Below are positions 5,489 to 54,876 of a DNA stretch of 64,000 bases, piece after piece. This stretch comes from Scyliorhinus canicula (Eukaryota), in assembly GCF_902713615.1 (NCBI RefSeq), contig NC_052162.1, forward strand, positions 130,348,653-130,412,652, given 5' to 3'. A program made the position numbers and the translations under genes. The notes beneath the pieces are model-generated. The model was given only the letters and a program-made list of their open reading frames with translations. It searched no databases and had not been told where the DNA came from. Positions within the stretch are counted from its first letter, which is position 1. Every line of letters begins with the position of its first letter.

Positions 5489-6224
5489 AATGAGGAGCAG
5501 AAGTCGCCAATTCAGCCCTTGGAGCCTGCTCTGCCATTCAATCAGATCACGGCTGATCTTGTCCTGGTCTCAAATCCACCTCCCCACCTGTTCTCCATAT
5601 CTGTTTACCTTGTTTTTTAAAATTGGTAATATATCTCCTTGCAACCATTTAACGATTCAAACTGCACTGCACTATGGGACAGCAAGTTCTACAAATTCCC
5701 CACCCTCTGTGAGAAATAGTTCCTCCTCTCAGAAAAATGCTTTTCACTGTACTTCAGTACATGTGACAATAAATCAAATCTACCGCCTCTCAACCTATGT
5801 CTGTGAGATGAAAAGGAGTGGGGGGGAGGCTCATGTGGAGCATAAATACTGACACAGACCAATTGAGCCAACTGGCCTGGCCCTGTGCTGTGGACTCAAT
5901 GCAATAGAGACAAATGTATTTAATTTAGATCCACCTGTAGTGGTAGGAAAAACACTTATTTAAAATAAATGTCCTTCATCAGCTTTTGTGGATCATTCCA
6001 ATGGAAATGTGCTTTCCCGGGCTCAATGAACATCAGCCCATTGGAAGCAAAGTTGTGAGGCCGGCCAGTCCAGCAGAAAAAAATCCTCTGACCCTCCCAC
6101 TTCACGAAGTGTCAGAATGAACATGGTTCAGTCCTGGATTTGATAACAGCAGGAATAACAGCAGAATCCAATTCCTTGAGAACGTGTTGGTGTCTCAGCA
6201 GCCTGGATAAATGAGTGAATCCCT

Positions 6225-7097
6225 TCATACACTCAGAATAGGTGATGCCCTCTCTCCGCTGTGAATTGACCGGTGTGTCAGCAATTTGTATGAATTACTG
6301 AACCCCTTGCCACACTCGGAGCAGGTGAACGGCCTCTCCCCAGAATGGACTTGCTGGTGTCTTCGCAAGGTGGATGAATGTCCAAATCTCTTCCCACAGT
6401 CACAGCAAATGAACGGCCTTTCCCCAGTGTGAACGCGCTGGTGCGTCAGCAGGTTGGACGAATCACTGAATCCCTTCCCACAGTTAGAGCAGGTGAATGG
6501 CCTCTCCCCTGTGTGAACTCGCTGGTGTCTCAACAGATCAGATAACTGAGTGAATCCCTTCCCACACTCAGAACAGGTGAACGGCCTCTCCCCGGTGTGA
6601 ACTCGCTGGTGTGTCTGCAGGGCGGATGAATGAATGAATCCCTTCCCACACTCAGAGCAGGTAAAAGGCCTCTCACCAGTTTGAACTCGCTGGTGCCTCA
6701 GCAGACTGGATAACTGAGTGAATCCCTTCCCGCACTCGGAGCAGACGAATGGCCTCTCCCCGGTGTGAACTCGCCGGTGCGTCTGCAGGTTGGACAACTG
6801 CGAGAATCCCTTCCCGCACTCAGAGCAGGTGAATGGCCTCTCCTTGGTGTGAACTTGCTGGTGTCTCAGCAGGGCCGACGAACAAATGAACCGCTTCCCA
6901 CAGTCTGAACAGGTGAACGGTTTCTCTCCGGTGTGGCCTTGCCGGTGTGACTGCAGGTTGGACAGGTGTGTGAACGCTTTCCCGCACTCCGAGCAGGTGA
7001 ACGGCCTCTCGCCGGTGTGACTACGGTGATGTGTTCGGAGTGCAGACGGGGACTGGAATCCCTTCCCACAGTACCCGCATTTCCATGGCTCCTTCAT
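6225..7097 (-). CDS. C2H2 zinc-finger protein, 290 aa, 10 fingers (finger 5 has H->Q), type B
   Basis: ATG at 7097 (MKEPWKC); in-frame TGA 39 nt upstream; coding-exon acceptor TTTTACAG|G with exon starting 7455; frameshifted 11th finger overlapping and following the stop. Confidence 0.9.
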
Positions 7098-9089
7098 AGT
7101 GCGGGTGACCTTGTGCCTCTCCAGTTTCAATGATCAATTGAAGACTCCTCCAGGCACAGAACAGGCAGACAGTTTCCACAGACTGTGAATGGTCTCATAT
7201 GTTTGCTGTAATTGATTACAGCTTTCTCCACAGTCAGTGCACTGAAACTCGCTCACGTGAGTTTGTGCGTGTGTCTCTCGGTGCTTTTCCAGTCACACTG
7301 AAGTTGAAAACCTTGTGAAGCAGCTGGAACAGACAAACGTTTCTCCTCATTGCTTCATGACCTCTATTCACATCGTGAGGAATCGAGTGACTCTTGTCGA
7401 CCCAGATGTGACGATTGTTTTGTGATTTGTCTGCAAATCCTCCCCTTCTAATATCCTGTAAAATGAGTTTGCGAAAATCATCAGTCAGTACAGGTTAAAA
7501 ATTCAGAACAGACAATTCTAGTTATTTTGTGGAACCTGTTTGTATTGTGTGAAATATTTTAAGACCAATTATCCCGTCTATTCAAACACTGTTTGTCTCT
7601 CAATACAATGATTCATTTATGTTCATTTTACTTTGATTGTTACAGTAAGTTTTAAAAAGGTGAAACATTGGCCTTCGGTTTATTGGAGTTGCCTGGGAAT
7701 TTGTTCGTTTTCAGCTTATTGGTCTCCACGGGATTTGTAACAACATCCCTAGTGCTGCACATATCCGATCCATAATGAAGCTCATTAAGTATTTCTTGTC
7801 TTGACATAGTACTGAGGATTGTACTCCAGAATTGCTGCATCTTTTTCCCAACCTGACCATGTTAAAATTGCCCCTTAGTGTCCAACGGTTAGATGCGGCT
7901 GCGGGGACAGGTTGGGGCCTAGGTTCAGGTGCCCTTCCAGAGGGTCAGTGCAGACTCGATGAGCCGAATGGCCTCCTTCTGCACTGTAGGGATTCTATGA
8001 TCTATGTTGAGATTTGGGCCACTTGCTTTATTGCTCATCCGTAATTGTCCTTGAGAAGACATAGTCAGCTGACGTCTTGAACCGCTGCAGTCCATATCAT
8101 AGAATTTACATACAGGCCATTCGTCCCATCAAGTCAGCACCCAACATAAGCCCACGCCTCCACCCTATCCCCATAAACCCAGTGACCCAACCTAACCTTT
8201 TTGGACACTAAGGGCAATTTATCATGTCCAATCCACCTAACCTGCACATCTTTGGACGGTGGGAGAAAACCCATGCAGATATGGGGAGAACGTACAAACT
8301 CCGCACAGTCACCCAAGGCCAGAATTGAACCCGGGTCCCTGGTGCTGTGAGGCAGCAGTTCTCACCACTGTGCCACCCATATGATGTTGGTACACCCACA
8401 GTGCTTTTGGGGAAGGATTTGCAGCTTTCTCAACAGTGCTGAAGCTCAGTTTGGGCTCCTCCACAGCTACTCAGCCCCTAAACCCATTACAGACTGTGAG
8501 TCCGAACATGGAAGAAAGAGCTCAACCCAAGGCGGCCCAGCTGCAGCATTCTAATGTGAAACTACTCAACTAATGTGAATGAAGTTTGGGTGGCACAGTG
8601 GTTAGCACTGCTGCCTCACCGATCCAGGTTCAATCCCGGCCTTCATAAGGATTCTATGAACCCTATCTAAATTGAAGTCAATGGGATTGAGGGAGAAAAC
8701 TCTTAACTGGTTCCATCACACCTCCCAAAGGTAAGATGATTGTGGTTGTTGGAGGTCAGTCATCTCAGTTCCAGGATATCGTTGCAGTAGTTCCCCAGGG
8801 TACTGTGCTGGGCCCCCAATCATTTCCAATATTATTCCATGAACACGGTGTGGGTCGTGGGGGGGGGGAAAGAGATGTTCACTGATGATTGTACAAAGTT
8901 CAGCACTATTCATGACTCCTCACTGAGGCAGTCCATGTCCATTTGCAAGACATGGACAATATTCAGGTTTGGGATGATAAGTGATCATAGAATCTCTACA
9001 GTGCACAATGAGGCCATTTGGCCCATCGACCATCTGAAAGAGCACTCTGCCAAGGTCCACTCCCCTGCCCAAACCCCATGCATTGATCA

Positions 9090-16184: not shown

Positions 16185-16896
<712 letters not shown>

Positions 16897-18498: not shown

Positions 18499-18534
18499 GG
18501 CTCTGGCCATCCCCTGTTCACAATGTTCGGCTCC

Positions 18535-20691: not shown

Positions 20692-21813
20692 ATGGAAGAA
20701 AAAGGCTCCGTTCAGAGTGAGGAGAAACCGTACACGTGTTTTGTGTGTGGACGAGACTTCAGCGGATCTTCTGATCTGTTGAAACATAAGTGCAATCACA
20801 GCAGGGAGAAGCCGTGGAAATGCGGGGATTGTGGGAAGGGATTTAAATCCCCGTCTGACCTGGAAACGCACCGGCGCAGTCACACCGGGGAGAAACCATT
20901 CACTTGCTTCCGGTGTGGGAAGGGATTCACTCGTTCATCCTACCTGCTGATACACCAGCGACTTCACACCGGGGAGAGGCCGTTCACCTGCTCCAAGTGT
21001 GGGAAGAGGTTCATTCAGTCATCCAACCTGCTGACCCACCAGCGAATTCACACCGAGGAGAGGCCTTTCAAATGCCCAGACTGCGGGAAGTGTTATAAAG
21101 GTTCCATGGAACTGATGCGCCATCGACGTGTTCACACCGATGAGAGACCGTTCAGGTGCTCTCACTGTGGGATCGGGTTCAGGTGGTCATCTCAACTCAC
21201 TGCGCACAAGCACAGCCACACGGGGGAGAGGCCGTACACTTGCTCTGAGTGTGGGAAGGCATTCACTCAGTCATCCCACTTGCTGAGACACCAGCATGGT
21301 CACAGCGATGAGAGGCCGTTCACCTGCTCCATGTGTGGGAAGGGATTCACTCAGCAATCCCATCTGCAGACACACCAGCGGGTTCACACCAATGAGACCC
21401 CTTTTAAATGCCTAGGTTGTGGAAAATGCTTCAAAGGATCCCAGGACCTGATGCTCCATCAACGCCTTCACCTTGCTGAGGGATCGTTCGGGTGCTCTCA
21501 ATGCGGGACTGGGTTCAGGAAGTCATCTCAACTCGATGCACACCAGGAAATTCACACTGGAGAGAGGCCGTTCACCTGTCCTGGGTGTGGGAAGGGATTC
21601 ACTCACCCATCCAACCTTCTGAGACACCAGCGGGTTCACACTGGGGAGAGGCCGTTCACCTGCTCGGAATGTGGGAGGGGATTTACTCAGTCATCCAACC
21701 TGCTGACACACCAGAGAGTTCACACTGGGGAGAGGCCGTTCACCTGCTCTGAATGTGGGAGGGGGTTTGCTTATTTATCTGTACTGCTGACGCACCAGCG
21801 AGTTCACAAGTAA
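20692..21813 (+). CDS. C2H2 zinc-finger protein, 373 aa, 13 fingers, type A
   Basis: [19 protein letters not shown]; acceptor ~20578/20580; ends HK*; AATAAA 21929-21934. Confidence 0.92.
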
Positions 21814-29600: not shown

Positions 29601-30212
29601 AATGGAGCTATTAAAAAGGATCAACGCACTGTATTTAAAATAAAGCTGATTTATTAGATGTTTGATCACAATATTAATTCCTAAAACTGGGCTCGAGTTT
29701 ATTAACATCAGCAGAAACCGACCCCAATGAGACCTTGATGTGGTTAATGAAAATGAAATGAAATGAAAATCGCTTATTGTCACAAGTCGACTTCAAATGA
29801 AGTTACTGTGAAAAGCCCCTAGTCGCCACATTCCGGCGCCTGTTCAGGGAGGCTGGTACGGGAATTGAACTGTGCTGCTGGCCTGCCCTGGTCTGCTTTC
29901 AAAGCCAGCCCTGTGCTAAACCAGCACCAAAATCCCATCACTGCAGTTACTTGTGAATGCGCTGTGTCTCGGCAAATACTTTCCCACATTCAGCGCAGGT
30001 GAATGGCGTCGCCCCACAATGAACTGGCTGGTGTACAGTGAATTGAGATAATTTCCTGAACTGAGTCCCTCAGTGAAAGCACGTGAATGATCTCTTATCA
30101 GTGTGAACATGAGCAAAGGTTCTCAGGCCCTATTACAGCACTTCCCAAAGCCTGGCATTCAAAAGCTCTCCGAGTATGAACCTCCTGATGTGGCAGCAGT
30201 GTGATAAAGCAA

Positions 30213-30869
30213 CTAATCCTTTCCAACACCCAGAGCAGGTGAATGCCCGCTCCCAGTGTGAACCCGTTGGTGTGCCAACAGGTTGGAAAACTGAGTGAAT
30301 CCCTTCCCACACTCTGCGCAGGTGAACGGCCTCTCCCCATTGTGAACCCGCTGGTGTGTCAGCAGGTTAGATGACTGAGTGAATCCCTTCCCACACTCTG
30401 CGCAGGTGAACGGCTTCTCCCCAGTGTGAACCCGCTGGTGTCTCAGTAGGTGGGATGAGGTAGTGAATCCCTTCCCACACTCGGAGCAGGTGAACGGCCT
30501 CCCCCCGGTGTGAACTCGCTGGTGGACAGTGAGTTGAGATGATTGCCTGAACCCAGTCCCGCAGTGGGAGCACCTGAACGGTCTCTCGTCGGTGTGAACG
30601 CGCTGGTGTCTCAGAAGGTGGGATGACTGCGTGAATCCTTCCCCACAGGTCGAGCAGGCGAAAGGCCTCTCCCCAGTGTGTCTGCGATGATGCGTTTCCA
30701 GCTTCGACGGGGAAATGAATATCTTCCCGCAGTCCTCACATTTCCACGGCTTCTCCCTGCTGTGAGTGCTCGCGTGTCTCGACAGGCCATTTGAACGGCT
30801 GAAACCTCGCCCGCACTCAGAACACGTGTATGGTTTCTTTCCACTGTGAGCGGAATCTTTTCCCTCCAT
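30213..30869 (-). CDS. C2H2 zinc-finger protein, 218 aa, 7 fingers, type A, with a frameshift-shortened C-terminus
   Basis: ATG 30869 ([16 protein letters not shown]); acceptor TTTCACAG|G with exon starting 30991; about 4 decayed fingers and the ancestral HK* stop downstream (~29947). Confidence 0.85.
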
Positions 30870-32494: not shown

Positions 32495-34019
32495 GTTTTT
32501 TTAAATGGTTTTTATTAAAGCTTTTTTCAAACAAAATTTTTACATAACTAATAACAGAAAAATAAACAACAAATATTCAACAAAACTCGGTGGCTGTTAT
32601 CATTATACAAAAAGAAAATATACATTAAATAGACAGTTCCCCCAGCCGAGCCCCCCGCCGACCCCCCCCCCCCCCCCCCCCCCCGATTGCTGCTGCTGTT
32701 GTTGACATTTTACCGCTCCCCGAGAAAGTCGAGAAAGGGTTGCCACCGCCGGGAGAACCCCATCAAGGACCCTCTCAAGGCAAACTTTATTTGCTCCAGG
32801 CTGAGGAACCCAGCCATGTCACTAACCCAGGTCTCCACACTCGGGGGTTTTGAGTGTCTCCACATTACAAGATCCGTCTCCGGTCTACCAGGGATGCAAA
32901 GGCCAAAACCTCGGCCTCTTTCGCTTCCTGCACTCCAGGATCCTCTGACACCCTAAAGATCGCTATTGTTGGACTCGGCTTCACCTGCGTGTCCAAAATC
33001 CTGGACATAGCCCTCACAAAGAATTCTTTGAGCGCTGGGCATGCCCAGAACATATGGACATTGTTCGCTGGATTCCCTGAACATCTCACACAGCTGTCCT
33101 CCACTCCAAAAGAGCTTGCTCATTCTCACCGTCGACATGTGTGCCCGATGTACCACCTTTAACTGAATTAAGCTGAGCCTGGCACATGATGAGGAAGAAT
33201 TCACCCTGCCCAGGGCATCAGCCCACAGGTCCTCATCCAGCTCCTCACCCAGCTCCTCCTCCCACTTGCCCTTCAGTTCCTCCACTGAGGCTTCCTCCAC
33301 CTCCTGTAGCTCTTGGTAGATGTCCGACACCTTCCCCTCTCCTACCCAGATGCCAGACACTACCCTGTCCTGTATCCTTCGAGGGGGTAGCAACGGAAAT
33401 GTCCCCACCTGTTTTTTGAGAAAGTCGCGGACTTGGAGGTATCTGAAGGCATTTCCAGGGGGCAGGCCGAACTTCTCCTCCAGCGCCTTCAAGCTAGGGA
33501 ATGTCCCATCTATAAACAGGTCTCCCATCCTTCTGATGCCTGCCCTATACCAGCCTTGAACCCCCCCCCCCCCCCCCCCCCCCCCCGTCTATCTTGCTTG
33601 TAGCAAATCTATGGTTGTTCCGTATCAGGGTCCATACTGGGGCCCCCTCCTCCTTCCTGTGCCTCCTCGACTGACCCCAGACCCTCAGTGCCGCCGTCAC
33701 CACCGGGCTTGTGGTATATCGTACCGGCGAGAACGGCAGCGGTGCCGTTACTAGTGCCCCTAGGCTGGTGCCTTTGCATGACGCCGCCTCTAGCCATGCC
33801 TACGCCGACCCTTCCTCCATTACCCATTTCCTACTCATGGCCAGGGGCTGGTTTAGCTCGCTGGGCTAAATCGCTGGCTTTTAAAGCAGCACGGTTCGAT
33901 TCCCGTACCAGCCTCCCCGGACAGGCGCCGGAATGTGGCGACTAGGGGCTTTTTACAGTAACTTAATTGAAGCCTTCTTGTGACAATAAGTGATTTTAAT
34001 TTTCCTTTCATTAGCCACC
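32495..34019 (-). mobile_element. 5'-truncated L1/Tx1-clade LINE, inserted in the head of an HE1 SINE (32193-32494)
   Basis: LIQLKVVHRAHM, CCHC motif CVRC..HMFWACP, AATAAA plus A-tail; the SINE head resumes ~34021. Confidence 0.85.
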
Positions 34020-34685: not shown

Positions 34686-35960
34686 AGCTTCCCCAACTGT
34701 TCCAGCAAGTACCACCCCAAGGACATCAGTCCCGGCCCTGCCCAGGTGTAACCCGCCCAGTTTGTACTGGCCCACCTCCTCCGGAACTGGTCCCAATACC
34801 CCATGAATCTGAAATCTTCCCCCTCACACCATCCTTTCAGCCACATAATCATCCGATATATCCTGCTGTTTCTCCATTGACCAGCACGTTGCACTGGTGG
34901 TTATCCTGAGATCGCTACCGTTGAGGTCCTACTTTTCAACTTGTTTCCAAACTCCCTGTATTCTGCTTATAGGACCTCACCCCTTTTAACCGAATCCATT
35001 TGTATCAATGTGTACCCTGACAACTAGCTGTTCACCCTCCCCTTTCAGAATGTCCTGCAACTGCTCTGAGACACCCTTGACCCTAACACCAGGGAGGCAA
35101 CATACCATGGGGCCACAGAAACGTCCATCGATTCCCCTTCCAATGGAATGCCCTGTGACTATTGCATTTCTACGCCTTTTGCTCCTCCCCTGTGCAGCAG
35201 AGCCAAACGTGGTGCTACAAATTTGGTTGCTGCTATTGTCCCCTGACAGGTCATTACCCTCAATAGTATCCAAAATGGTACATCTGTCTTTCCGAGAATG
35301 GCTACAGGAGATTCCTACACTGCCTACCTAGCTCTCTTGCTCTGCCTGGTGGTCACCCATTCACTTCCTGCCAGTGGAGTCTGAGGCAGCATGGTAGCAC
35401 AGTGGTTAACACTGTTGCTTCACAGCGCCAGGGTCCCAGGTTCGATTCCTGGCTTGGGTCACTGTCTGTGCAGAGTCTGCACGTTCTCCCCGTGTCTGCG
35501 TGGGTTTCCTCCGGGTGCTCCGGTTTCCTCCCACAAGCCCCGAAAGACGTGCTGTTAGGTAATTTGGACATTCTGAATTCTCCCTCTGTGATCCAGACAG
35601 GCGCCGGAATGTGGCGACAAGGCGATTTTCACAATAACTTCCTTGCAGTGTTAATGTCAGCCTACTTGTGACAATAATAAAGATTATTATGACTGAAAAA
35701 TTATCTGTTGATTGAGTGCGGTGTGACAACCTCTCAATACATGCTATCCATGATACTCTCCACTTCCCAGATGTTCCACAGTGTCCCCAGACGCTGCTCC
35801 AGCTCCAGAACCCAGGCTTCCAGGGGATTGGGCTGGAGACAGATCCTGCACACATGCTGGATGTGGGAACTAGAAACATTCCTGGTCTTCCAAGCGGAGC
35901 AAGGAGAGCAGACCACAGCTTGGCACTCTCCTGCCATGTATTACCCCTTTAAGTTGAATT
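34686..35960 (-). mobile_element. CR1 LINE ORF1 relic (zinc-finger plus SGNH esterase), interrupted by a Rex1-tailed V-SINE (35384-35690)
   Basis: MAGECQAVVCSPC..HVCRIC; IVTGHSIGRG..CCLPGVRV..VHIDTN. Confidence 0.8.
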
Positions 35961-36972: not shown

Positions 36973-37463
36973 GTATCAAACTCTACCAACTAGGGCCCTT
37001 CGTCTCCACTCTTTATTATTATTGAATATACTTCTTACAAACAATGAATCATAGAATGATGTCTTAACAATTATAACCAAAAGCAGTCGTAAATACCTCC
37101 CCAACTGAACTCACCCAAACAGCTGTTCAGCTTTCCTTGGGAGATGTAAACTTGCACTCCACTGTTCCTTAGTCTTTTAACCATCTGGTTCTGCTCTTAG
37201 AATCATTTTTTCTTTCCCCCTTTATTCTCCTCACTTTGTTCCCTAACAGTTATCTTATTAAAGTTAGTTAGGTTTCAGAATTTTAAAGACGGTCCCTAAT
37301 ATCAGTTACTCACCAACCAATCAGCTTAACACATTCCAGTGTCATTCAATCCAGCTGGTTCTCTCCTTACCTTTGTAAAGGTGAATAGTTGGGACATCGC
37401 ATCACCAAACACATCCCAACCTGTTCCATCTGAGAATCCCAGGGTGGGGAACTGTGAAATCCT

Positions 37464-38113
37464 GGGCGGGATTCTCTGATCCTGAGGCTAAGTGTTGACG
37501 CCGTCGCGTTTTACGACGACGTCAACAGGCCCCTCAGAGTAGTGGTCCTGTGCTGCACAGGGGGCCAGCATGGCACTGGAGCACTTCACGCAGCTCCAGC
37601 TGCCGATACCGCCGTCAGAACTGCCGGCGCGAGTTCGTGCATGCGCGCTACGGCCGGCGCGAACTCCCGCATGTGCGCGAGTTGCCTTCTCCGGCCCCGA
37701 CGCAACATGGCGGAGAGCTACAGGGGCCCGGCGTGGAGGAACATAGGCCCCCACCAGGAGAAGCCCGACCGCCGATCGGTAAGCCCCGGACTGCGGGCAG
37801 GGCCACGGTGCAGCCCCCCTCCCCCGGGGTCGGATCGCCCCTCCACCCCACCAGGCCGCCCCCCACAACATGAACGCCGAGGTCCCGTCGGGTAGGACAC
37901 GTGAACGGTGCCGGCGGGACTCGGCCTAAGTCAGTGGGCACTCGGGAAATCGCGCGCGGAGAATCGCCGGAGTGGGCAGACCACGCCAATGGCGCCGATT
38001 TTCCGGTCAACAGAGAATCGGCGGACCAGCATTGGGGCAGCGTCACGTGAATCGCGCCCCCCCCCCCTCCCCCCCACCCCCCCGGTGTTTCTCCGACCCC
38101 GGGCATTCCGCCT
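37464..38113. mobile_element. PIF/Harbinger-like MITE
   Basis: GGGCGGGATTCTC..ATTCCGCCT termini; 3-bp TSD CCT. Confidence 0.7.
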
Positions 38114-38236
38114 CCTGTCTCCAAACACTTCCCATCCTGTTCGTACAGAGAATCCCAGGATGGGGAATTGGGACATCCTGTCTCCAAACATCCATGTTCA
38201 CACAGAGAGTCCCAGTGTGGGGAACTGGGACATCCT

Positions 38237-38777
38237 GGACTGGATTCTCCAAAAATGGGGCTATGTCCCTTTACGCTGGTGTTTCACTCTGAACTTTCCT
38301 TAAGAAAGTCTTGAGCAATTCTTCTACCTGCAGGGGGCTGGCAGGGCCCACGGAGCGCTGGCTGCGGATACGGGGCCCCACACTTCGTCGGGAGTCTGCG
38401 CATGTGCATGGCGGCAGCCTGTGGCGGCCACGCCGTGCGACATGTTGGACTCGCACCGCACACCAGCGTAGGCCGCCCCAAGATTGCGCGAGCACGCAGG
38501 TCCGTGCCGCCTAATCGCTCCCCTGGCCATCCATGAGCCTCCCCGGTGATCGATCCCCTCCACCCCCCCCCAATCAGGGCGGCCGCGGACTGAGACTGCA
38601 GCCGCTACCGGCCGTTCCCGACAGCCGATAGGTGGTTAGAACCACGCAGTCGGGAATTCGGCCAGTTCTGCGCGGAGAATCGTTTCAGCGGTGCTGGTCA
38701 CGATTTCCGGGTGAACAGCCATTCTCCGCCCCCGCGCCGAACGCAATTTTGGCATGGAGGCTGGGAGAATCCAGCCC
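38237..38777. mobile_element. PIF/Harbinger-like MITE
   Basis: TIRs GGACTGGATTCTCC / GGAGAATCCAGCCC; 3-bp TSD CCT. Confidence 0.8.
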
Positions 38778-39785
38778 CCTTTCTCCAAACACATCCCACC
38801 CTGTTCACACTGAGAATCCCAGGGTGGAGAACTGGGACATCCTGTCTCCAAACACATCCCATCCTGTTCACACTGAGAATCCCAGGGTGGAGAACTGGGA
38901 CATCCTGTCTCCAAACACATCCCGCCCTGTACACACTGAGAATGCCAGGATGAATAATTCTCACACACATTCATTCCTGTTAATCTACCTGTGTGCTAAA
39001 ACAGATAGGTGTTCACTGGTTAGTTAAACACACAGAGTATCTGGTAGAGTTTGATCCAATAATTCTACATATTTCACATACCCCAGTGACGTTATTAAGT
39101 ACAGGGTCAATTTAAGGAGTGTCCCCAATGTGATGGAATAGATGGATTATGGGATTACAATGTAAAGATATATGATATAAAATGATAAAAGGAAATGATT
39201 TAGAGAAAATATATGATATAAAAAGAAAGAAAATATGTTGTGGAACCAACCAGGGAGCAGGCTACTCTGGATTTAATATTGTTTAATGAGGAGGGATTAA
39301 TGATGACCTCATAGTGGAGTTGAGACCATAATGAGATCAGCCATGATCGTACTGAACGGTGGAGCAGGTTCAAGAGACTAAATTCCCTGATCCTGGCTCT
39401 GATGTTCGAAGAAATAACTATTCTGTCTGATTTCACATTACAACTTTGTCTGTAGCCTTGTAGGTAACAGCACCTCAAGCACAAATCTGGTGTTCTTGAT
39501 TAATAAGGGGATTTCTTAATTAATATGGATATCAGGCCTTATGGGGGGGTGGGGGTGGGGCAGGCAAATGGGGATGAGGAACACATCAGCCATGATCAAA
39601 CGGCTGGGCAAACTTGATGGGCCAAATGCTGCTCCTATATCTTATGGTCTTGTGCTGCAAGCACTTTGAGTAAAATTTTACCGGCTGGACACGGCCTCAC
39701 ACATTGAGGCCCGTGTCCAGCAAATGCCTTCCCAGTGCACATTACTGGCCTTTTGGTTGAGACGGGGCACATTGACCTGTGAAAA

Positions 39786-40128
39786 ATTAGAATTAGAATT
39801 AGAACAGTACAGCACAGAACAGGCCCTTCGGCCCTCGATGTTGTGCCGAGCAATGATCACCCTACTCAAGCCCACGTATACCTATCCCAGTAACCCAACA
39901 ACCCCCATTAACCTTATTTTTTAGGACACTAAGGGCAATTTAGCCTGGCCAATCCACCTAACCCGCACATCTTTGGACTGTGGGAGGAAACCGGAGCACC
40001 CGGAGGAAACCCACGCACACACGGGGAGGATGTGCAGACTCCGCACAGACAGTGACCCAGCCGGGAATCGAACCTGGGACCCTGGAGCTGTGAAGCATTT
40101 ATGCTAACCACCATGCTACCGTGCTGCC
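39786..40128 (-). mobile_element. Full-length HE1 V-SINE
   Basis: Head, V-domain, CR1 tail with TTCTAA repeats. Confidence 0.9.
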
Positions 40129-40279
40129 CATCTGCCAGTTTGTGCACAAAAGGTGAAATGGGAGTTTTACTTGCAGTTCTGAATCATTTCGTTTGTAATT
40201 TTATTGATTTCCACCGCACCGCATCCCAAATTTCAGACCACAGCAAACAAAAGGCTATTTCCATGATTTGGACTTGCCA

Positions 40280-40740
40280 TGGCGGGCATGTTACCCGTCA
40301 TCCTGCGCGGTGGTGAATGTCCTCCATTCACACCACAGGAGATCACCGCGCAGGCGCAGTACCGCCCAGTATTTGAGCATGCGCTCTGATAGCGATGGCG
40401 AGCCTCTTGTCTGTCGGATCTCCAAACAGGTGAGGATGAGGTAACGCGGAAGGATCGATGGAGCTGGCGGTTGGTCGGGGAGGCTTTCTAAACAGCCGGT
40501 GAAGGCTTTAACCCCCCAATACGAACCTGAGGGTCTATCGTTTGCAGCTCCGGGTGTTTTTTGCGGAGACAGACGCGGACTAATAGCCGCCATCTTTGTT
40601 CAGAGGGTAGCGGTGCGCATGCGCTAGCGGTCTGATGACGTTGCCTAATCGGCGGAGCCTCGGGGGGGTGGGGTCTCTGCTTCCAACCGGGTCCTAGTGA
40701 CCGGCTATACCTTAAGACTTCTGCTGATGTTTTCGGCCTC
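40280..40740. promoter_or_regulatory. CpG-island bidirectional promoter between divergent ZNF genes (30869 minus, 41956 plus)
   Basis: NRF1-like motifs 40348-40358, 40376-40385, 40615-40624; YY1 GCCGCCATCTT 40586-40596; donors CAG|GTGAGG (plus, 40429/30) and CAG|GTTCGT (minus, 40527/6). Confidence 0.75.
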
Positions 40741-41154
40741 AATGAGTATATGGGCTATGTGTGTATATTCAGTGTGATAGGATGTAGCTCCTGTACACTT
40801 TTCTGAAGGAGCTGCTTCTCAATGTTTGGTTACACTTCAGCTGCTGATCTTTGGCTGCCCAGTGTGAGGAGGCTGGGGAAGTCAGAGACGATCTTCCCCT
40901 GAACCTGCACTTGGTCAAAACAGCAATTTGTACCTCCATGATGAGTGAGGGCTGTGGGCCGCTCTGGCTGGCGGCCTCTCTTCTGTGGTCTTGCCCTCGC
41001 CTCAGTGGCCCTGGAGAGCAGCATCCGTGTCTGCCGGTGTACTCAATACCTTCCACAACCATTGGGAACCTCTGAGTACAGGCTATTTCATTGACGCTGG
41101 GAATAACATTCTGCTTTAGAGCCATTTGGTCATTCAGCCCAAAAAGAGGCCATT

Positions 41155-41358: not shown

Positions 41359-41955
41359 CCGTGGCCCACCATGTCTATGCTGACAATCAAATACCAATCA
41401 ATACTTATCCCTTTTACCACCACTTGGTATAGGGTCATAGAGTTGGAAAGGTTCTCTTAACTCTTTTAGGGAGCTTGTTGTTAAAAGTAATTTGTTTGAA
41501 TCACATGTTGGGGGAAACAAGAGAAGGCATGATATCCCATAGAAACTAGAATCGCCTGTTCTGAATTTCTATCCTGGATTGAAAATGTGATACTGACGCT
41601 GTCAACTCCTTTTACAGGTATTAGATTAGGATTTGCCAAACTTTCTACAGATCTGTCCGAGTCATCAGGACCTGAATATCATCGGCCTTTAAAAGTGGAA
41701 GGAGAAATGTTTGTCTGTTCTGTTTGTGGGAAAAGATTTCAAACATCAGTGTGACTGGAAAAGCACCGAGACCCACACAACACACACCCGAGTGAGAGAG
41801 TTCCAGTGAACTGACTGTGAAAAAAGCTTAAACTAATTACATAGCCTGAAAAAACATCAGATCATTCACAGCAAGGAGAGAGAGTGCACATGTTCTGTGT
41901 GTGGACGAGGCTTCACTGATTATCCAACCTGGAGAGACACGAAGACCCCAGCACC

Positions 41956-42882
41956 ATGGAGAAGCCGTGGAAATGTGGGGACTGTGGGAAGGGATTCAGA
42001 ACACCGTCTGTGCTGGAAACGCATCGACGCAGTCACACCGGGGAGAGGCCGTTCGCCTGCTCTCAGTGTGGGAAGGGATTCACACAATCATCTAGCTTAC
42101 GTAAACACCAGACAACTCACACTGGGGTGAGACTCTTCACCTGTTCAGAATGTGGGAATGGGTTCACTCAACTAACGCACCTCACTGCACACCAACTTGT
42201 TCACTCAGACATGAGACCTTTTAAATGTTCCGACTGTGAAAAGAGCTTTAAAAGCAAGAAAAATCTATTGACACACCAGCGAGTTCACACTGGGGAGAGG
42301 CCGTTCACCTGCTCTCAGTGTGGGAAGAGATTCACTCAGTTATCCAGCCTGCTGACCCACCAGCGAGTTCACACCGGGGAGAAACCATTCACCTGCCCTG
42401 AGTGTGGGATGGCATTCATTCAGTTATGCAACCTTTTGGATCACCAGCGGGTTCACACTGGGGAGAGGCCATTCACCTGCTCTGTGTGTGGGAAGGGATT
42501 CGCTCAGTCATCCACCCTGCTGAGACACAAGCGCATTCACACTGGGGTGAAACCATTCACCTGCCTTGAGTGTGGGAAGGGATTCACTCAGTCTGCCCAC
42601 CTCGCTTCACACCAACGTGTTCACTCTGACACGAGACCTTTTACATGTTCCGACTGCGAGAAAAGCTTCAAAGGCAAAATGGATCTGCTGATTCACCAGC
42701 GCAGTCACACTGGAGAGAGGCCGTTCACCTGCTCCGTGTGTGGGAAGGGATTCACTCAGCAGTGTCTCCGGATGAAACACCAGCGCATTCACACCAGGGA
42801 GACATTATTCATCTGCTCCATTTGTGGGAAGGGATTCTCTCATTCATCCACCCTGCTGACACACCAGCGAGTTCACAAGTAA
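41956..42882 (+). CDS. C2H2 zinc-finger protein, 308 aa, 11 fingers, type B
   Basis: Strong Kozak CACCATGG, MEKPWKC...HK*; acceptor TTTTACAG|G with exon starting 41618; ATTAAA 43018-43023. Confidence 0.93.
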   Translation: MEKPWKCGDCGKGFRTPSVLETHRRSHTGERPFACSQCGKGFTQSSSLRKHQTTHTGVRLFTCSECGNGFTQLTHLTAHQLVHSDMRPFKCSDCEKSFKSKKNLLTHQRVHTGERPFTCSQCGKRFTQLSSLLTHQRVHTGEKPFTCPECGMAFIQLCNLLDHQRVHTGERPFTCSVCGKGFAQSSTLLRHKRIHTGVKPFTCLECGKGFTQSAHLASHQRVHSDTRPFTCSDCEKSFKGKMDLLIHQRSHTGERPFTCSVCGKGFTQQCLRMKHQRIHTRETLFICSICGKGFSHSSTLLTHQRVHK

Positions 42883-43137
42883 CAGGAGTTGGATTCTGCT
42901 GTTCTTGCTGCTGTGAATCACATCCAGGACTGAACCACGTTCATTCTGACAGTTAGTTAGTTTCAGTTGATGTTATTAATCCCTGTAACTGGAGTTTAAT
43001 GTTCTGGAAATAGATGAATTAAATCATCTTTGTGTCAGACACACAGTGTTGGAGTCCTTGATTTCTCTAAGATAAGAGGAGACTGATTGATGTCCTGTTA
43101 CTGACTGTTCCATTGTTGGTTCTTTTCTCCTTTGTTA

Positions 43138-43592
43138 ATGCAAGACTTGTATTTATGTAGCGCCTCTCACAACTTCAGGATGTCCCAAAGTGCTTTACAG
43201 CCAATGCGGTTCTTTTGAAGTGTAGTCACTGTTGTAATGTAGGAGATGCAGTCACCAAATGTACACAGCAAGATCCCGCAAACAAATGTGACTGTGACCA
43301 CAGAATCTGTTCAGTGATGTTTGTTGAGGGATGAATACTGTATTAAGCAGTAAACCAGGGAGAACTCCCCTGCTCTTTGGAATAACATCATGGGAACTTT
43401 TACACCCAACTGAGGGCAGATGGGGCCAAGAGTTGAAGATCTGATCTGGAAGACGGGACCTGTGACAGTGCAGTGCTCCCTCAGGACTGCATCAGAATAT
43501 CAACCTGGATTTAATGCTCATGTTCCTGGAGGTGGATTTGAACCCACAACCTCCTGACTCAGAGATACGAATGTAACCACTGAGCCACAACT
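43138..43592 (-). mobile_element. SacSINE1/AmnSINE1-like DeuSINE (3' fragment also at ~3435-3550 on +)
   Basis: tRNA head GTGGCTCAGTGG..GGGTTCAAATCC, Deu-like core, L2-type tail CATTACAACAGTGACTACACTTCAAAAG..GCGCTACATAAATACAAG. Confidence 0.75.
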
Positions 43593-43768
43593 AACACCTC
43601 ATCATTGCTCTGGATTATTTCAGTTCTCACACCTTCTGCTATTCTTATAGACAAGTGTAAAGTTTCAGTCTGGCAGTCACATATTACCCAAAAGGGGTTG
43701 AAGATATTGGTGACCGAAGGAACAGTTTTGATACGATACATAGGCTAAATAAGCAGAAAAGACATACA

Positions 43769-44570
43769 GGGCATGATTTAGCGACTGCCTTGCGGCCAGC
43801 GCTGATCCGGGCACCTTCCAGGTGCGACGGGTGAGTTCCGCGAGAGCCCCAAATCAGGCTCCGTGCCTGGCGCCAGACCGATTGCGAGTCACCCCACGCG
43901 ATCTGGATCACTCCCTTGCTGGGCAAGACCCAGAATTCCCCCAGCGCCCAGGAGTCAAAGGCCGTGCTGGTGAGATCTTGCCAAGGGGCCATTTAGCACT
44001 GGTTTCTACAAACGTAGACCAGACGTGACGGCACCTGGGGGGGGGGGGGGGGGGGGGGGGGGGACTTGCAGGCCATTAGAGAACCCCAGGTGGCTCCTTG
44101 ACGCAAGCAACCTTGCGCACCAACCAAGCACCCTGGCTGTGCCAGCTTGGGTGGCATTGCCAGGAGCACTGTCAGTGTCCAGGTGCCAAGGGTCGGGCCA
44201 GGGTTGACCTTGCCCATTAGAAGGGGGTGAAGGGGAGGTTTCCAAGGGCCTCAAGACAATTGGGGGGTAAAGGGGGTGGTCCTGAAAGCCGGGGCTGGGG
44301 GGGGTGGGGGTGGCAAAAGTGGGTTGGGGGGGTGGTCTAGAGATCATGGGGCAGCCTTCCAAAATGGTGCCCCGATCTTCAAGGAGTCGGTCCTGCTGGC
44401 GAGTTCAGCTCGCCAGTGCAGGATGCCCGCCTAAGTGTAGCCTCGACGAGAAACTCCGAGGCAAAATGCCATTGAATAGAAGGGTTATTCTCAGCACTGC
44501 TGCCACCAGGAAACACCCCACCAAAAGCACATGAAAGTGAACTTTAACCATTTTTCATTGATTAACGCCC
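43769..44570. mobile_element. GC-rich Harbinger-like MITE
   Basis: GGGCATGATTTA / GATTAACGCCC termini; GC-rich interior. Confidence 0.55.
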
Positions 44571-44622
44571 ATGACCCGTAACAGGTGTGAGGATGAATGT
44601 TTTCTTATATTTGGGGGGAATA

Positions 44623-45811
44623 TTGTGCTGTTCTGAAAATAAGGCTGTATGTATGTGTGAGTCTAAATTATTTAATTAAACTGGGGACAATGGAGACAAC
44701 CTGTCTGGGAGAGTTGAGAGATAAAATAGGTAGTAGGTGCTAAATGCATGTATTTGTAATGAAGCTGCAGTAAGGTGCGTTAAAAGTAAATAAGTAGAGT
44801 TTAGAACTTTGCGGTAGGAGAGTGACAGTGGTTTGACTTTTTCATTGCTCAATTTCAAAGGGGAGTAAAAGACTTTTACAGTTTGCAAAAGTTTCAAAAG
44901 TAAACAAGGGAAGACGTTTATTTAACCCAAATGGGGAGGCAATAGGAAAAACAGAAAAGATATTTATATTTTGGAAATGTTAAGTTCAGAGCGGGACTAA
45001 AGACAATGTGATCGAAGATGAAAGAGAAAAGGGATATTTACGGAAATATGTTGAGCTGAGTTGTGTTGGCTGTGTGGGGAAGACCTCGTGGGAAAAGTCC
45101 TCTGCGACGAAAAGGTACAAATTTTGAATCGACCATCCGGTCGAGCCAGAAAAGTCTTGGTTGTATAAAGCAGTCTTGTTTCTTTATACTCTTGGATTTC
45201 TAGAGCAGTGTAGGAGAATGTGAGAAATCGTCTGCTATATCTAGGGTAATATTGCAGAATTTTTAGAGTTACAAATATATACTGAAGTGTTGCCAGGAAA
45301 ATGTTTACTTTTGGTTCTGACCAAGTGTTTCCTTTGGTGATGAATGTTTTGTTAAGAGTATTTTTACTGTGTAACTGTAATCTTTTGTGCTTAAGTTTTC
45401 TTTACATCTTGTTAATAAATCCTTCACTTTTCAAAATCCCCAAAGCGTGACTGGAATTCTATGTTTCTGGGCTCAGTAGGTTTCTCTCATTTTCAGAATA
45501 CGATGAAAAGGGTTATGATTGGTTGGACGGTAGGACAGCACGGTGGCGCAGTGGGTTAGCACTGCGGCCTCACGGCGCCGAGGTCCCAGGTTCGATCCCG
45601 GCTCTGGGTCACTGTCCGTGTGGAGTTTTCACATTCTCCCCGTGTCTGTGTGGGTTTCGCCCCCACAACCCAAAAATGTGCAGGGTAGGTGGATTGGCCA
45701 CGCTAAATTGCCCCTTAATTGGAAAAAATAATTGGGTACTCTAAAAAAAATTTTGGAAATGATTGGTTGGACAAGTTTCTGTCTGGGATTTGGCTTGCTC
45801 GGTGAATAACA
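44623..45811 (+). mobile_element. Probable solo LTR carrying an A-tailed SINE (45529-45758)
   Basis: TGTG..AATAACA ends, AATAAA ~45414; SINE TSD ATGATTGGTTGGAC (45515-45528 / 45759-45772). Confidence 0.5.
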
Positions 45812-48455: not shown

Positions 48456-49270
48456 TGTTGGAACGGTTTCTCCCCATTCTGAATTAACTGGTGCATCAGC
48501 AGATTGGGAAGCAGGTGAACGGCTTCTCCCCAGTGTGAACTCGCTAATGAGTCTCCAACTAAGAGGGGGATCTGAATGCCTTCCCACAGTCCCCACATTT
48601 CCAAGGTTTCTCCATGATGTGGGAGTTCATAACAATAATAGTCTTTATTATTGTCACAAGTAGGTTTACATGAACTCTGCAATGAAGTTACTGTGAGAAT
48701 CCCCCAGTCGCCACATTCCGGAGCCTGTCCGGGTCACAGAGGGAGAATTCAGAATGTCCAATTCACCCAACAGCACGTCTTTTGGGACTTGTGGGAGGAA
48801 ACCGGAGGAAACCCATGCAGACACGGGGAGAACATGCAGACTCTGCATAGACAGTGACCCAAGCCGGTGATCGAACCTGAGGCCCTGGCGCTGTGGAGAA
48901 ATAGTGCTAACCACTGTGCTGCCGTGCCGCTCTTGAGTTTCGATGATCTGTTGACGTCCCACCAACTGACAGAAAACATATGAGGTTTCTTCTCACTGAG
49001 AATGATCTGATAGTTTTTCAGGCTGTGTAACTGGTTCAAGCTCTTTCCACAGTCAGTTCACTGGAACACTGACTCTAATGTGCATCTGTCTTGGGGCTTA
49101 TCCAGTCGCACTGAAGTTTGAAATTTCTTGCACAGAGAGAACAAACATTTCTCCTTCCACATTTAAGGGATGATGATGATTTATCAGATCTGATCTGATA
49201 AATCAATGAAGATGTTGAGATAATTTTTGATTTACGCTTCCCGCTTGTTAATCCTCCCCTTCTAATTAGC
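48456..49270 (-). pseudogene. Type B zinc-finger pseudogene with a Rex1-tailed V-SINE inserted (~48632-48930)
   Basis: Acceptor TTTTAAG|G with exon starting 49270; ATG 48615 [25 protein letters not shown]; truncated at the L1 junction. Confidence 0.85.
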
Positions 49271-53519: not shown

Positions 53520-54130
53520 TCCGCAACTATCTTACGGCGATGGAACAATTGACTTCCCAGTGAACCTTGCAGAATATGAGCTGTCCCGTTAAAGGGGCGG
53601 AGGACCTCTAAACAATGTATGGTTGGATGGTATATAAAGCCGGTCAGTTAGGCATCGGCAAAGCAGACTATATAATAGTGATTGTAAATAAACTGAGTTT
53701 GTTTGAACAATTGGGTGTGGACTCCTTCGTAGCCACAGAAAACTGGCGATGTGGGTCAGACTGGATAGCTCTCAATGCTGCTGCATAATCCACGGATAAG
53801 CCACCTCCTGGTCCCTGTTGGATAAAGGTTGGATTTCTCTTTTCATTATGCAGCTGTTTGGAAGGTTAGATGTCTTTGACGGCAGCTTGGAAGACTGGAA
53901 TAGGGGCTGGTTTAGCCCACTGGGCTAACCAGCTGGCTTGTAATGCAGAACAAGGCAGCATCGCAGGTTCAATTCCTGTACCAGCCTCCCCAAACAGGCG
54001 CCGGAATGTGGCGGCTAGGGGCTCTTCACAGTAACTTCACTGAAGCCGACTTGTGACAATAAGCGATTATTATTATTAGTAGTATGTGGCGTGCATGCGC
54101 TACTTTTTCATGGCCAATAATACCACAAAG

Positions 54131-54876
54131 CTCCTTCTCCTCTTGCGCCCAGCTCAGCCTAATTCAGCTGAAGGTGCTGCATAGGGCTCACATGACAGGG
54201 GCAAGGATGAGCCGGTTCTTCGGAGGGGAAGACAGGTGCGGGAGGTGTTTGGGAGGCCCGGCGAACCACACCCATATGTTCTGGGCTTGTCCGGCCTTGG
54301 CGAGGTTTTGGAAGGGGGTGGCGGGGACTTTGTCAGAAGTGGTCGGGTCTAGGGTCAAGCCGGGCTGGGGGCTCGCGATCTTTGGGGTAGCTTCGGAGCC
54401 GGGAGTGCAGGAGGCGAGAGAGGCCGGCATTCTGGCCTTTGCGTCTCTAGTAGCCCGGCACAGGATTCTGTTACAGTGGAGGGATACGCGGCCCCCGAGT
54501 TCGGAGACCTGGATCAACGACATGGCTGGGTTCATCAGGTTGGAGAGGATGAAGTTTGCCCTGAGGGGGTCGGTACAGGGGTTCTTTCGGCGGTGGCAGC
54601 CCTTTCTCGACTTCCTGGCGAAGGGGTAGAGAGTGGTCGGTCTCGCCAGCAACCGGGGGGTGGGGGGGTTTGGGGATGGTTAGGGGGTTTGTTTTTGCGG
54701 CAGTGGGTTTGCTATGTTGTTATTTTCTTCTTGTATTGCTATTGGTTTTTTGTTATTATTTATTTTGGGGGGGTGAGTTCTTTTCTTGTGTTGGTGTGGA
54801 AACACGCCTTGTTTGTTTTAAATTGTGGGGAGAAAATTTGTTATTGAAAAACTTGAATAAAAATTATTTTAAAAAA
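54131..54876 (+). mobile_element. 5'-truncated L1/Tx1-clade LINE
   Basis: Open ORF2 C-terminus CGRC..HMFWACP..WQPFLDF; 15-bp TSD AATAATACCACAAAG (54116-54130 / 54877-54891). Confidence 0.92.

What the first reader, a model, noticed from the sequence alone, without database searches (positions are those of the whole stretch)
41618..41958. Fossil zinc fingers retained in the 5'UTR with shared TGA stops, a new ATG born from the linker, and a uORF
Seen: type B genes have up to three broken fingers between the splice acceptor and the ATG, and the stops are shared between paralogues. (1) A TGA at helix position -1 lies exactly 39 nt upstream of and in frame with the ATG at 41917 and 7136 (38 nt at 16640). 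(2) GTG-TGA-CTG-GAA-AAG-CAC occurs at 41752 and 7295 (CGA at 49108). (3) TTC-CAG-TGA replaces the first Cys at 41807 and 49060 (TGC in the 7 kb gene). The start codon sits where type A genes have the linker AGC-AGG-GAG (SRE), now ACC-ATG-GAG in strong Kozak context. A u[18 protein letters not shown], lies at 41707-41754. Inference: an ancestral gene was N-terminally truncated (CGA->TGA) and rescued by AGG->ATG, then amplified. The leader may now act in translational control. Readthrough or Sec recoding is unlikely given the indels but is testable.
Basis: partly seen in the sequence, partly recalled or inferred. Interest (0 to 1): 0.7.

Follow-up and report, generated by a model that had tools for sequence, protein, structure and literature searches.

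The report
Dead zinc fingers in 5' leader
A shark zinc-finger gene has lost its first three fingers to stop codons and frameshifts and now starts at a new ATG in a linker; the dead fingers persist as transcribed, neutrally drifting leader sequence, which is a tidy but unsurprising case of zinc-finger gene turnover.

Summary
The 11-finger ORF at 41956-42882 is preceded, in the same exon, by three decayed C2H2 fingers with 4 stops and 2 frameshifts. The ATG replaces the Arg codon of the HSREKPWKC linker in all four "type B" copies in the window. The TGA 39 nt upstream is shared by three copies and by an unrelated public contig (L001).

The ORF is under purifying selection: omega is 0.23-0.35, and neutral simulation gives P(no stop) = 0.012 and P(all 44 Zn ligands kept) < 5e-5. 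RNA-like contigs from three studies run unbroken from 41615 across the ATG, so the fossils are leader, not intron. Proteins starting MEKPWKC are annotated in four other shark orders, so the architecture is old.

Not supported:
- The order "CGA->TGA, then rescue". The stop nearest the ATG comes from GGA, and stop sharing is incongruent.
- A conserved uORF. The uATG is absent in two copies, and a second uORF was missed.
- Constraint on the leader. Its differences ignore codon position, it diverges like the flanks, and it has no stable fold.
- Sec recoding. No SECIS was found.

The splice acceptor and upstream exon were not shown. The scan has noted this leader on many other pieces of this genome.

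The parts
41540..41617 (+). Sequence just upstream of the exon. It holds a block (about 41540-41584) conserved in type A and type B copies, then a pyrimidine run and CAG (41615-41617), the putative splice acceptor.
   Evidence: Alignments A2 and A3. Sliding-window identity is 24-25/30 at 41540-41569. One RNA-like contig (X15 record 10) starts at 41615. No splice joint was observed.
41618..41706 (+). Pre-finger part of the leader, homologous to the 5' part of the type A coding exon. The position of the type A start codon reads GTG at 41695-41697.
   Evidence: Of the sampled words of 41618-41760, 0.7-0.9 are held by transcriptome-sized runs of two studies.
41707..41754 (+). uORF 1 (15 codons, [15 protein letters not shown]). 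It ends on the F1' TGA and is in frame with the main ORF. Its ATG is present only in the 41 kb and 49 kb copies.
41716..41778 (+). Fossil finger F1'. All four Zn ligands are kept, with TGA at helix position 3 (41752-41754). The stop is shared with the 7 kb copy; the 49 kb copy has CGA.
41807..41869 (+). Fossil finger F2', read in the +1 frame. The first Cys codon is TGA (41807-41809, shared with the 49 kb copy; TGC in the 7 kb and 16 kb copies). It also has a private TAA at 41834-41836.
41890..41919 (+). uORF 2 (9 codons, MFCVWTRLH) in weak Kozak context. It ends on the 41917 TGA. A homologous ATG is present in the 16 kb and 49 kb copies.
41891..41952 (+). Fossil finger F3', homologous to the intact first finger of type A. 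It has a 1-nt deletion at 41914/41915 and TGA at helix position -1 (41917-41919, from GGA). The final His is replaced by Ser (AGC, 41950-41952).
41956..42882 (+). Main ORF of 308 codons, starting at ATG 41956 in the context ACC-ATG-G. It has 11 intact C2H2 fingers and no other domain. It contains an internal 5-finger tandem duplication (42033-42457 versus 42453-42877).
42883..43098 (+). 3' UTR, at least to 43098, with ATTAAA at 43018.
   Evidence: RNA-like contig X1 record 8 covers 42922-43098 with 0 differences. The signal was listed.
6225..7451 (-). Paralogue B7k.
- The leader (7451-7098) has the three fossil fingers still in one frame, two in-frame TGAs (7295, 7136) and 4 uATGs.
- The ORF runs 7097-6225 with 10 fingers, one of them with His->Gln.
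16354..16878 (-). Paralogue B16k, a dead copy. It has TGA at 16640, ATG at 16602, a partly deleted F1'/F2' block, and stops and frameshifts in the body.
48535..49262 (-). Paralogue B49k, a dead copy.
- The leader has CGA at 49108, TGA at 49060 and AGA at the -39 codon.
- A SINE is inserted at 48930-48635.
- The ATG is at 48615-48613, and the first finger has two stops.
20692..21813 (+). Type A reference gene A20k. Its ATG at 20692 (MEEKG) is followed by an intact first finger, the linker HSREKPWKC (AGG at 20803-20805) and 13 fingers.
30213..30869 (-). Type A reference gene A30k. Its ATG is at 30869 (MEGKD). The linker HSREKPWKC has AGG at 30758-30756. The C-terminus is frameshifted after 7 fingers.

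Best explanation
The gene at 41618-43100 (+) is a transcribed, selectively maintained C2H2 poly-zinc-finger gene with no effector domain. It belongs to an old shark-specific subfamily ("type B"). In an ancestor of this subfamily, the Arg codon of the linker before the KPWKC finger became ATG in good Kozak context. The fingers upstream of it were disabled; at least the GGA->TGA change 39 nt upstream is ancestral.

Translation of the 11-finger protein now starts at 41956 (inferred). The 338 nt between the exon start and the ATG are the relic of the former 5' end plus three dead fingers. This relic is carried in the mRNA as 5' leader and evolves essentially neutrally. Each copy has gone on collecting its own stops, frameshifts and uATGs.

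The uORFs are by-products of this decay. They probably lower translation of the main ORF through scanning interference (inferred, not tested). They are not a conserved control device.

Some family members stay functional (41 kb; largely 7 kb). Others die (16 kb, 49 kb). This is ordinary birth-and-death evolution of a zinc-finger cluster.
For: Anatomy and homology of the fossils.

The ATG is at the same column in all four type B copies and in the outside contig L001, which also has TGA exactly 39 nt upstream.

Type A and type B split with 97/97 support, with long terminal branches of 0.14-0.35. Copies 41k and 7k are only 72.5% identical over 1268 nt.

Proteins starting MEKPWKC, MEKPWEC or MGKPWKC are annotated in Pristiophorus, Mustelus, Chiloscyllium and Cetorhinus. 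Type A N-termini are annotated in Scyliorhinus torazame and Cetorhinus.

Selection on the ORF:
- All 11 fingers have all 44 Zn ligands.
- Omega is 0.23 for the one clearly orthologous finger (41k versus 7k) and 0.35 between the two halves of the internal duplication.
- Neutral simulation at d = 0.14 gives P(no stop) = 0.012 and P(all ligands kept) < 5e-5.
- There are 6 breaking lesions in the 249-nt fossil part and 0 in the 924-nt ORF.

Neutrality of the leader:
- Differences between 41k and 7k fall 19:20:24 on the old codon positions (p = 0.73).
- K2P is 0.29-0.32, against 0.33 for the intron tail and 0.23 for the 3' flank.
- uATGs are not positionally conserved.
- The fold z-score is +1.23.

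Transcription:
- Contigs of three studies match at 99-100% over 41615-41724, 41751-41823, 41781-41984, 41883-41984 and on to 43098.
- All four runs show zero depth over 40300-41099.
- Stranded RNA reads are in the sense orientation.
- The 5' leader words are held by runs of several studies.

Only C2H2 domains were found.
Against: - There is no protein-level or ribosome evidence that 41956 is the start.
- The splice acceptor at 41617/41618 and the upstream exon were not observed. No joint was listed, and one contig simply begins at 41615.
- The contig runs are RNA only by inference.
- Most raw reads at 95-99% likeness come from paralogues.
- In run X20, depth falls to about 0.3 upstream of 41700, so the 5' boundary is uncertain.
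- Synonymous divergence in the one orthologous finger (dS about 0.68, on only 22 sites) exceeds the leader's 0.32. Read literally, this would mean some constraint on the leader.
- A 26-nt run identical between 41k and 7k (41744-41769, permutation p = 0.014) spans the F1' TGA.
- Two to four uATGs are unusual for an efficiently translated mRNA.
Confidence: 0.7

Rival explanations
1. The fossil-finger leader is a selected translational-control module. Conserved TGA-terminated uORFs, or a conserved RNA or protein-binding block, would set the output of the main ORF. That would explain why the leader is retained across the family.
For: - Both uORFs of the 41 kb copy end on TGAs shared with paralogues.
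- The uATG at 41890 has homologues in the 16 kb and 49 kb copies.
- A 26-nt identical run spans the F1' TGA (p = 0.014).
- The leader's K2P (0.32) is below dS of the orthologous finger (0.68).
- An earlier follow-up note on another window (s1-195939) reports a constrained block of about 120 nt.
Against: - uATG number, position and frame differ in every copy: 2, 4 and 3 uATGs. The 41707 ATG is ACG or CTA elsewhere.
- Indels and frameshifts accumulate.
- Substitutions ignore codon position, and the rate equals that of adjacent non-coding DNA.
- There is no stable structure (z = +1.23).
- Keeping the -39 TGA in 3 of 4 copies is within neutral expectation for branch lengths of 0.14-0.35 (my estimate: P about 0.2).
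- The dS estimate rests on 22 sites.
Confidence: 0.12
2. The 41 kb copy is a transcribed pseudogene like its 16 kb and 49 kb neighbours. Its long ORF has survived by chance and makes no functional protein.
For: - Two of the four type B copies in the window are clearly dead.
- The 7 kb copy has a His->Gln finger and a frameshifted last finger.
- Several uATGs precede the ORF.
- Locus-specific RNA depth is low.
Against: - The neutral simulation gives P = 0.012 for no stop and < 5e-5 for keeping all 44 ligands, even on the shortest branch.
- Omega is 0.23-0.35.
- There are 0 lesions in 924 nt against 6 in the adjacent 249 nt.
- Finger contact positions vary while the scaffold is kept.
Confidence: 0.08
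3. The real coding sequence begins in an unseen upstream exon, and some or all mRNAs bypass or read through the leader. Routes could be an alternative acceptor near the ATG, or UGA readthrough or selenocysteine recoding that gives an N-terminal extension.
For: - The upstream exon and the acceptor were not observed.
- In the 7 kb copy the whole 243-nt fossil region is still one frame, with only two stops, both TGA.
- Both uORFs of the 41 kb copy are in frame with the main ORF.
- Gene models in other sharks read the homologous type A region as coding from upstream exons (P0123, P0146).
Against: - RNA-like contigs are contiguous from 41781 to 41984 across the ATG in three studies.
- The 41 kb leader has two frameshifts and a TAA.
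- The fossil fingers have lost ligands.
- There is no SECIS or other Rfam match at E <= 10 in 41400-45000, and none at gathering score in the window.
Confidence: 0.05

Closest known systems
Human ZNF252 (8q24.3 cluster; Lorenz et al. 2010, PMC2865497)
   Same: This is a transcribed zinc-finger gene whose longest ORF is preceded by a dead domain, a KRAB-B box broken by a stop. Its 3' UTR holds eleven complete or degenerate fingers after the stop codon. Fossil domains of a ZNF gene carried in untranslated mRNA are therefore known.
   Different: In ZNF252 the dead 5' domain is KRAB, not fingers. It is a single decaying locus, not an amplified and selectively maintained family. No new start codon created inside a finger linker is described there.
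Finger loss and degenerate fingers in Krueppel-type ZNF arrays (reviewed for KRAB-ZNFs; cited as ref. 52 in PMC2865497; also primate surveys, PMC3126818)
   Same: This is birth-and-death turnover of fingers at array edges by in-frame stops, frameshifts and ligand loss. The 7 kb copy here also shows the classical 3' version: its last finger is frameshifted into the 3' UTR.
   Different: The described cases are mostly truncations at the 3' end, or internal degenerate fingers that stay translated. Here the loss is at the 5' end and needs a relocated start codon.
Effector-less poly-C2H2 proteins (annotated shark relatives are named 'ZNF239-like', 'ZFP2-like', 'OZF-like')
   Same: The protein consists only of tandem C2H2 fingers with TGEKP-type linkers. 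The closest named hits are such proteins.
   Different: These names come from automatic annotation. Orthology to the mammalian genes was not shown and is unlikely for a lineage-specific expansion.
uORF-controlled mRNAs (GCN4/ATF4 type)
   Same: Short uORFs lie upstream of the main ATG, with the last one ending 36 nt before it.
   Different: uORF position, number and frame are not conserved among paralogues. No function was tested. The resemblance is only formal.

Membership tests
C2H2 (Krueppel-type) poly-zinc-finger gene | Tandem C-x2-C-x12-H-x3-H units joined by TGEKP-like linkers | tested here: met
   There are 11 units at 41974-42876. Pfam zf-C2H2 scores 1.2e-67 and zf-H2C2_2 scores 1.4e-71.
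C2H2 (Krueppel-type) poly-zinc-finger gene | An effector domain (KRAB, SCAN, BTB) defining a subfamily | tested here: not met
   No non-finger Pfam domain was found in the ORFs of the 41 kb and 7 kb copies. Upstream exons were not identified, so a separate exon cannot be fully excluded.
ZNF gene with fossil domains in untranslated mRNA (ZNF252-like situation) | Recognisable domain-coding sequence, broken by stops or frameshifts, inside the transcript but outside the longest ORF | tested here: met
   Three fossil fingers lie at 41716-41952. RNA-like contigs run contiguously across them into the ORF.
Transcribed pseudogene | Disabling lesions in the main ORF and omega near 1 | tested here: not met
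   For the 41 kb copy there are 0 lesions, omega is 0.23-0.35 and the neutral simulation gives P <= 0.012. The feature is met for the 16 kb and 49 kb copies.
uORF-mediated translational control leader | uORFs conserved in position, frame or peptide among homologues | tested here: not met
   The 41707 ATG is ACG (7 kb) and CTA (16 kb). The copies have 2, 4 and 3 uATGs in different frames.
uORF-mediated translational control leader | Ribosome occupancy of uORFs and an effect on main-ORF output | not testable with these tools
   This needs Ribo-seq or reporter assays.
Selenoprotein mRNA (UGA recoding) | SECIS element in the 3' UTR | tested here: not met
   There was no Rfam match at gathering score in the window, and none of any SECIS family at E <= 10 in 41400-45000.
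Selenoprotein mRNA (UGA recoding) | In-frame UGA inside an otherwise intact, conserved coding frame | tested here: not met
   The 41 kb leader has two frameshifts and a TAA. The fossil fingers have lost ligands.

The most novel reading that the evidence does not exclude
The fossil-finger leader would be kept across a large shark ZNF subfamily because part of it has been co-opted as a shared cis-regulatory RNA element. The candidate is the block around the F1' TGA at 41735-41779 and the segment after it. It might act as a translational or stability switch common to dozens of effector-less ZNF genes. In that case the shared UGAs would be functional uORF terminators rather than scars.
Probability: 0.08. 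Interest if true: 0.6.

Novelty: new variant of a known kind. Interest (0 to 1): 0.3.

Why it matters
The finding is a clean, datable example of how a tandem zinc-finger array loses fingers from its 5' end. An internal Met codon in a linker takes over as the start, and the disabled fingers stay in the mRNA as leader.

It has three practical uses:
- Gene predictors will mis-annotate these genes. Models in other sharks either start at MEKPWKC or read through the leader.
- The shared lesions are good cladistic markers for sorting a very large shark-specific ZNF expansion.
- The fossils give an internal neutral yardstick beside a selected ORF.

It does not change what is known about ZNF evolution or translation.

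Tried and rejected
- **Whole-ORF homology search.** It was swamped by generic ZNFs and was uninformative.
- **Exact-sequence look-ups of window ORFs.** None is in the collection. The A20k query began 9 nt before the true ATG (20692), so that look-up says nothing.
- **Fetching the loci of the shark proteins.** P0122, P0135, P0063 and P0145 gave no DNA: the files were too large or not on record. The cross-species leader comparison could therefore not be done.
- **IUPAC pattern scans.** Scans for the KPWKC finger in metagenome contigs (twice) and genome contigs gave 0 hits. Even L001's own sequence is not in that collection.
- **SECIS or other RNA family.** Nothing was found.
- **Stable leader structure.** z = +1.23, so this was rejected.
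- **Search for the first exon.**
  - No paralogue-conserved block lies upstream beyond about 41535.
  - The CpG-rich stretch at 37500-39000 reads as a GC-rich repeat with 63-nt tandem units, and its RNA signal is cross-mapped.
  - A loose end at 38074 in run X15 does not continue anywhere in the window.
- **Finger-by-finger orthology of the 41 kb and 7 kb arrays.** Only finger 1 is orthologous, so whole-ORF dN/dS and third-position divergence between the two genes were rejected as a neutral yardstick.
- **Read laying joints inside the ORF.** They are chimeric matches between similar fingers of paralogues, not introns.

Full report
**What is there**

The window is a cluster of C2H2 zinc-finger genes in a shark. 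The best protein matches are shark proteins.

A six-frame finger scan and translations give seven loci:
- two "type A" genes: 20692-21813 (+) and 30869-30213 (-);
- four "type B" copies: 41618-42882 (+), 7451-6225 (-), about 16878-16354 (-) and 49262-48535 (-);
- the 3' end of a further gene at 1-333.

**The observation**

In the 41 kb copy, the 338 nt between the presumed exon start (41618) and ATG 41956 contain three decayed fingers.
- F1' (41716-41778) keeps all four Zn ligands but has TGA at 41752.
- F2' (41807-41869) is read in another frame. It has TGA in place of the first Cys (41807) and a private TAA (41834).
- F3' (41891-41952) has a 1-nt deletion and TGA at 41917. Its last His is replaced by Ser.

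Alignment A1 puts F3' on the intact first finger of type A. Type A reads CAC-AGC-AGG-GAG (HSRE KPWKC). The four type B copies read ACC-, ACT-, ACT- and ATC-ATG at the same place. The 49 kb copy has a SINE inserted just upstream of its ATG (48930-48635).

- The stop 39 nt upstream derives from GGA, the Gly at helix position -1 in type A.
- There is a second uORF at 41890-41919.
- The position of the type A start codon reads GTG in the 41, 16 and 49 kb copies. The 7 kb copy keeps ATG followed by a 2-nt deletion.

**Are the shared lesions inherited?**

A tree of the alignable parts splits type A from type B with 97/97 support. The type B copies are star-like, with terminal branches of 0.14-0.35. 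The 41 kb and 7 kb copies are only 72.5% identical over 1268 nt. These are old paralogues.

The lesions group the copies in conflicting ways:

| Lesion | Copies that have it | Other copies |
|---|---|---|
| -39 TGA | 41k, 7k, 16k | 49k has AGA |
| F1' TGA | 41k, 7k | 49k has CGA; 16k deleted |
| F2' TGA | 41k, 49k | 7k and 16k have TGC |
| GTG at the old start | 41k, 16k, 49k | 7k keeps ATG |

A tree (((41k,49k),16k),7k) explains all of these with one homoplasy. That homoplasy is at the CGA/TGA site, which is a CpG (inference). The founder therefore certainly had the new ATG and most probably the -39 TGA. The other stops came later.

The order "truncation, then rescue" cannot be read from the data. 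An internal Met that pre-existed and made upstream damage harmless is equally consistent.

**Evidence from outside the window**

A public contig (L001, a JGI sample, 1304 nt) carries a further type B copy. It has TGA exactly 39 nt before ATG-GAG-AAA-CCG-TGG.

Annotated proteins that begin MEKPWKC, MEKPWEC or MGKPWKC exist in Pristiophorus, Mustelus, Chiloscyllium and Cetorhinus. Type A N-termini (MEGKS...HSGEK.YTC...KPWKC) exist in Scyliorhinus torazame and Cetorhinus. The start at this codon therefore predates the split of several shark orders, or arose more than once. I could not fetch the DNA of those loci.

First-reader notes on at least eight other pieces of this genome describe the same leader. 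These notes are unchecked and are not counted as evidence.

**Is the ORF alive?**

Yes, for the 41 kb copy.
- All 11 fingers keep all 44 ligands.
- Only finger 1 is orthologous between the 41 kb and 7 kb copies. For it, omega = 0.23.
- The 41 kb array contains an internal 5-finger duplication whose halves give dS 0.61, dN 0.21 and omega 0.35.
- Neutral simulation on the shortest branch (d = 0.14) leaves the frame open in 1.2% of runs. It keeps all ligands in fewer than 1 in 20,000 runs.
- The adjacent 249 nt of fossils carry 6 frame-breaking lesions. The 924-nt ORF carries none.

The 7 kb copy is largely intact, with one His->Gln and a frameshifted last finger. The 16 kb and 49 kb copies are dead. 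Pfam finds only C2H2 fingers.

**Is the leader in the mRNA?**

Transcriptome-sized contig sets of three studies match the locus at 99-100% over:
- 41615-41724;
- 41751-41823;
- 41781-41984 and 41796-41984;
- 41883-41984;
- onward to 43098.

All four runs have zero depth over 40300-41099. This is why I read the contig sets as RNA.

Stranded raw reads lie in the sense orientation. Most are 95-99% alike and so come from paralogues. At 41964, for example, 116 of 136 reads carry another base.

Words of 41618-41760 are held at 0.7-0.9 by runs of two studies and at about 0.5 by four more.

However, no splice joint at 41617/41618 was listed, and the first exon was not found. The acceptor is inferred from two things: conservation of Y-rich-CAG|G in type A and type B, and a contig that begins at 41615.

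**Is the leader constrained?**

I find no good sign of constraint.
- Between 41k and 7k, the fossil part differs at 19, 20 and 24 sites on old codon positions 1, 2 and 3 (p = 0.73). It has been non-coding for essentially the whole divergence.
- Its K2P distance (0.29-0.32) equals that of the intron tail (0.33). It is above that of the 3' flank (0.23).
- uATGs number 2, 4 and 3 in the three copies, in different frames.
- The leader folds no better than shuffles (z = +1.23).
- Keeping the -39 TGA in 3 of 4 copies is within neutral expectation for these branch lengths (my estimate: P about 0.2).

Two weak hints point the other way:
- A 26-nt run is identical between 41k and 7k (41744-41769). It spans the F1' TGA and has permutation p = 0.014 for one pair.
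- dS of finger 1 is 0.68, but it rests on only 22 sites.

An earlier follow-up on another window (s1-195939) reached the same view of the uORF and proposed a constrained block. My data neither confirm nor exclude a short conserved block.

**Recoding**

No SECIS or any other Rfam family was found. Two frameshifts and a TAA in the 41 kb leader make readthrough or Sec recoding very unlikely.

**Comparison with what is known**

Dead ZNF domains inside untranslated mRNA are documented. Human ZNF252 has a stop-broken KRAB-B ahead of its longest ORF and eleven fingers in its 3' UTR. Degenerate fingers after in-frame stops are described as a general feature (PMC2865497).

The present case is the 5'-end counterpart. 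It adds a start codon born in a linker and inherited by a whole, partly functional subfamily. I rate it a new variant of a known kind, of modest interest.

Noticed in passing
window 48635-48930 (-), and about 30 other copies such as 39800-40130 and 35385-35690: A tRNA-derived SINE is inserted between fossil finger F3' and the ATG of the dead 49 kb copy. The same SINE family is very abundant in the window. It dominates the RNA runs, with summed contig depth up to about 1.9 million.
   Followed up: partly
window 42033-42457 versus 42453-42877: This is an internal tandem duplication of a 5-finger (420 nt) block inside the 41 kb ORF. The halves are 76.5% identical, with omega 0.35 between them. 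Outside finger 1, the arrays of the 41 kb and 7 kb genes are not orthologous finger by finger.
   Followed up: yes
window 6180-6250 (-): The 7 kb gene has lost its last finger to a frameshift. A fossil finger therefore also sits in its 3' UTR, which is the classical 3' form of finger loss. Finger 5 of the same gene has His->Gln at the last ligand.
   Followed up: partly
window 41540-41584 (+), 7523-7480 (-), 49337-49295 (-), with weaker matches upstream of 20580 and 30985: A block 35-80 nt upstream of the putative acceptor is about 80% conserved among type B copies and recognisable in type A. It is better conserved than the first part of the leader. It could be a branch-site or splicing element, or part of a promoter if the exon is not spliced.
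   Followed up: partly
window 37390-38950: This is a GC-rich stretch (GC 0.58-0.69, CpG o/e 0.7-1.0) with 63-nt tandem units. It looks like a CpG island, but it reads as repeat sequence and its RNA signal is cross-mapped.
   Followed up: partly
window 18500-18700: This is a tandem repeat of a 24-nt unit. It gives GPSKGAAG-type repeats in ORFs on both strands. It lies in the GC-rich region between the head-to-head 16 kb and 20 kb ZNF loci.
   Followed up: no
window 30166-30215 (-): The type A gene at 30 kb is frameshifted after 7 fingers; its ORF ends ...[15 protein letters not shown]. Finger-like DNA continues beyond its stop.
   Followed up: no
window 56314-57003 (+), 57919-58407 (-), 62357-63256 (-), 32953-33528 (-), 54084-54629 (+): ORFs here look like fragments of retroelement reverse transcriptase and related proteins, that is, transposon debris between the ZNF genes.
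   Followed up: no
L001 1-420: A 1304-nt contig filed under a JGI metagenome sample carries a shark-type ZNF copy. It has the TGA-39-ATG arrangement and a frameshift after about 2.5 fingers. It is presumably host DNA or RNA in that sample.
   Followed up: partly
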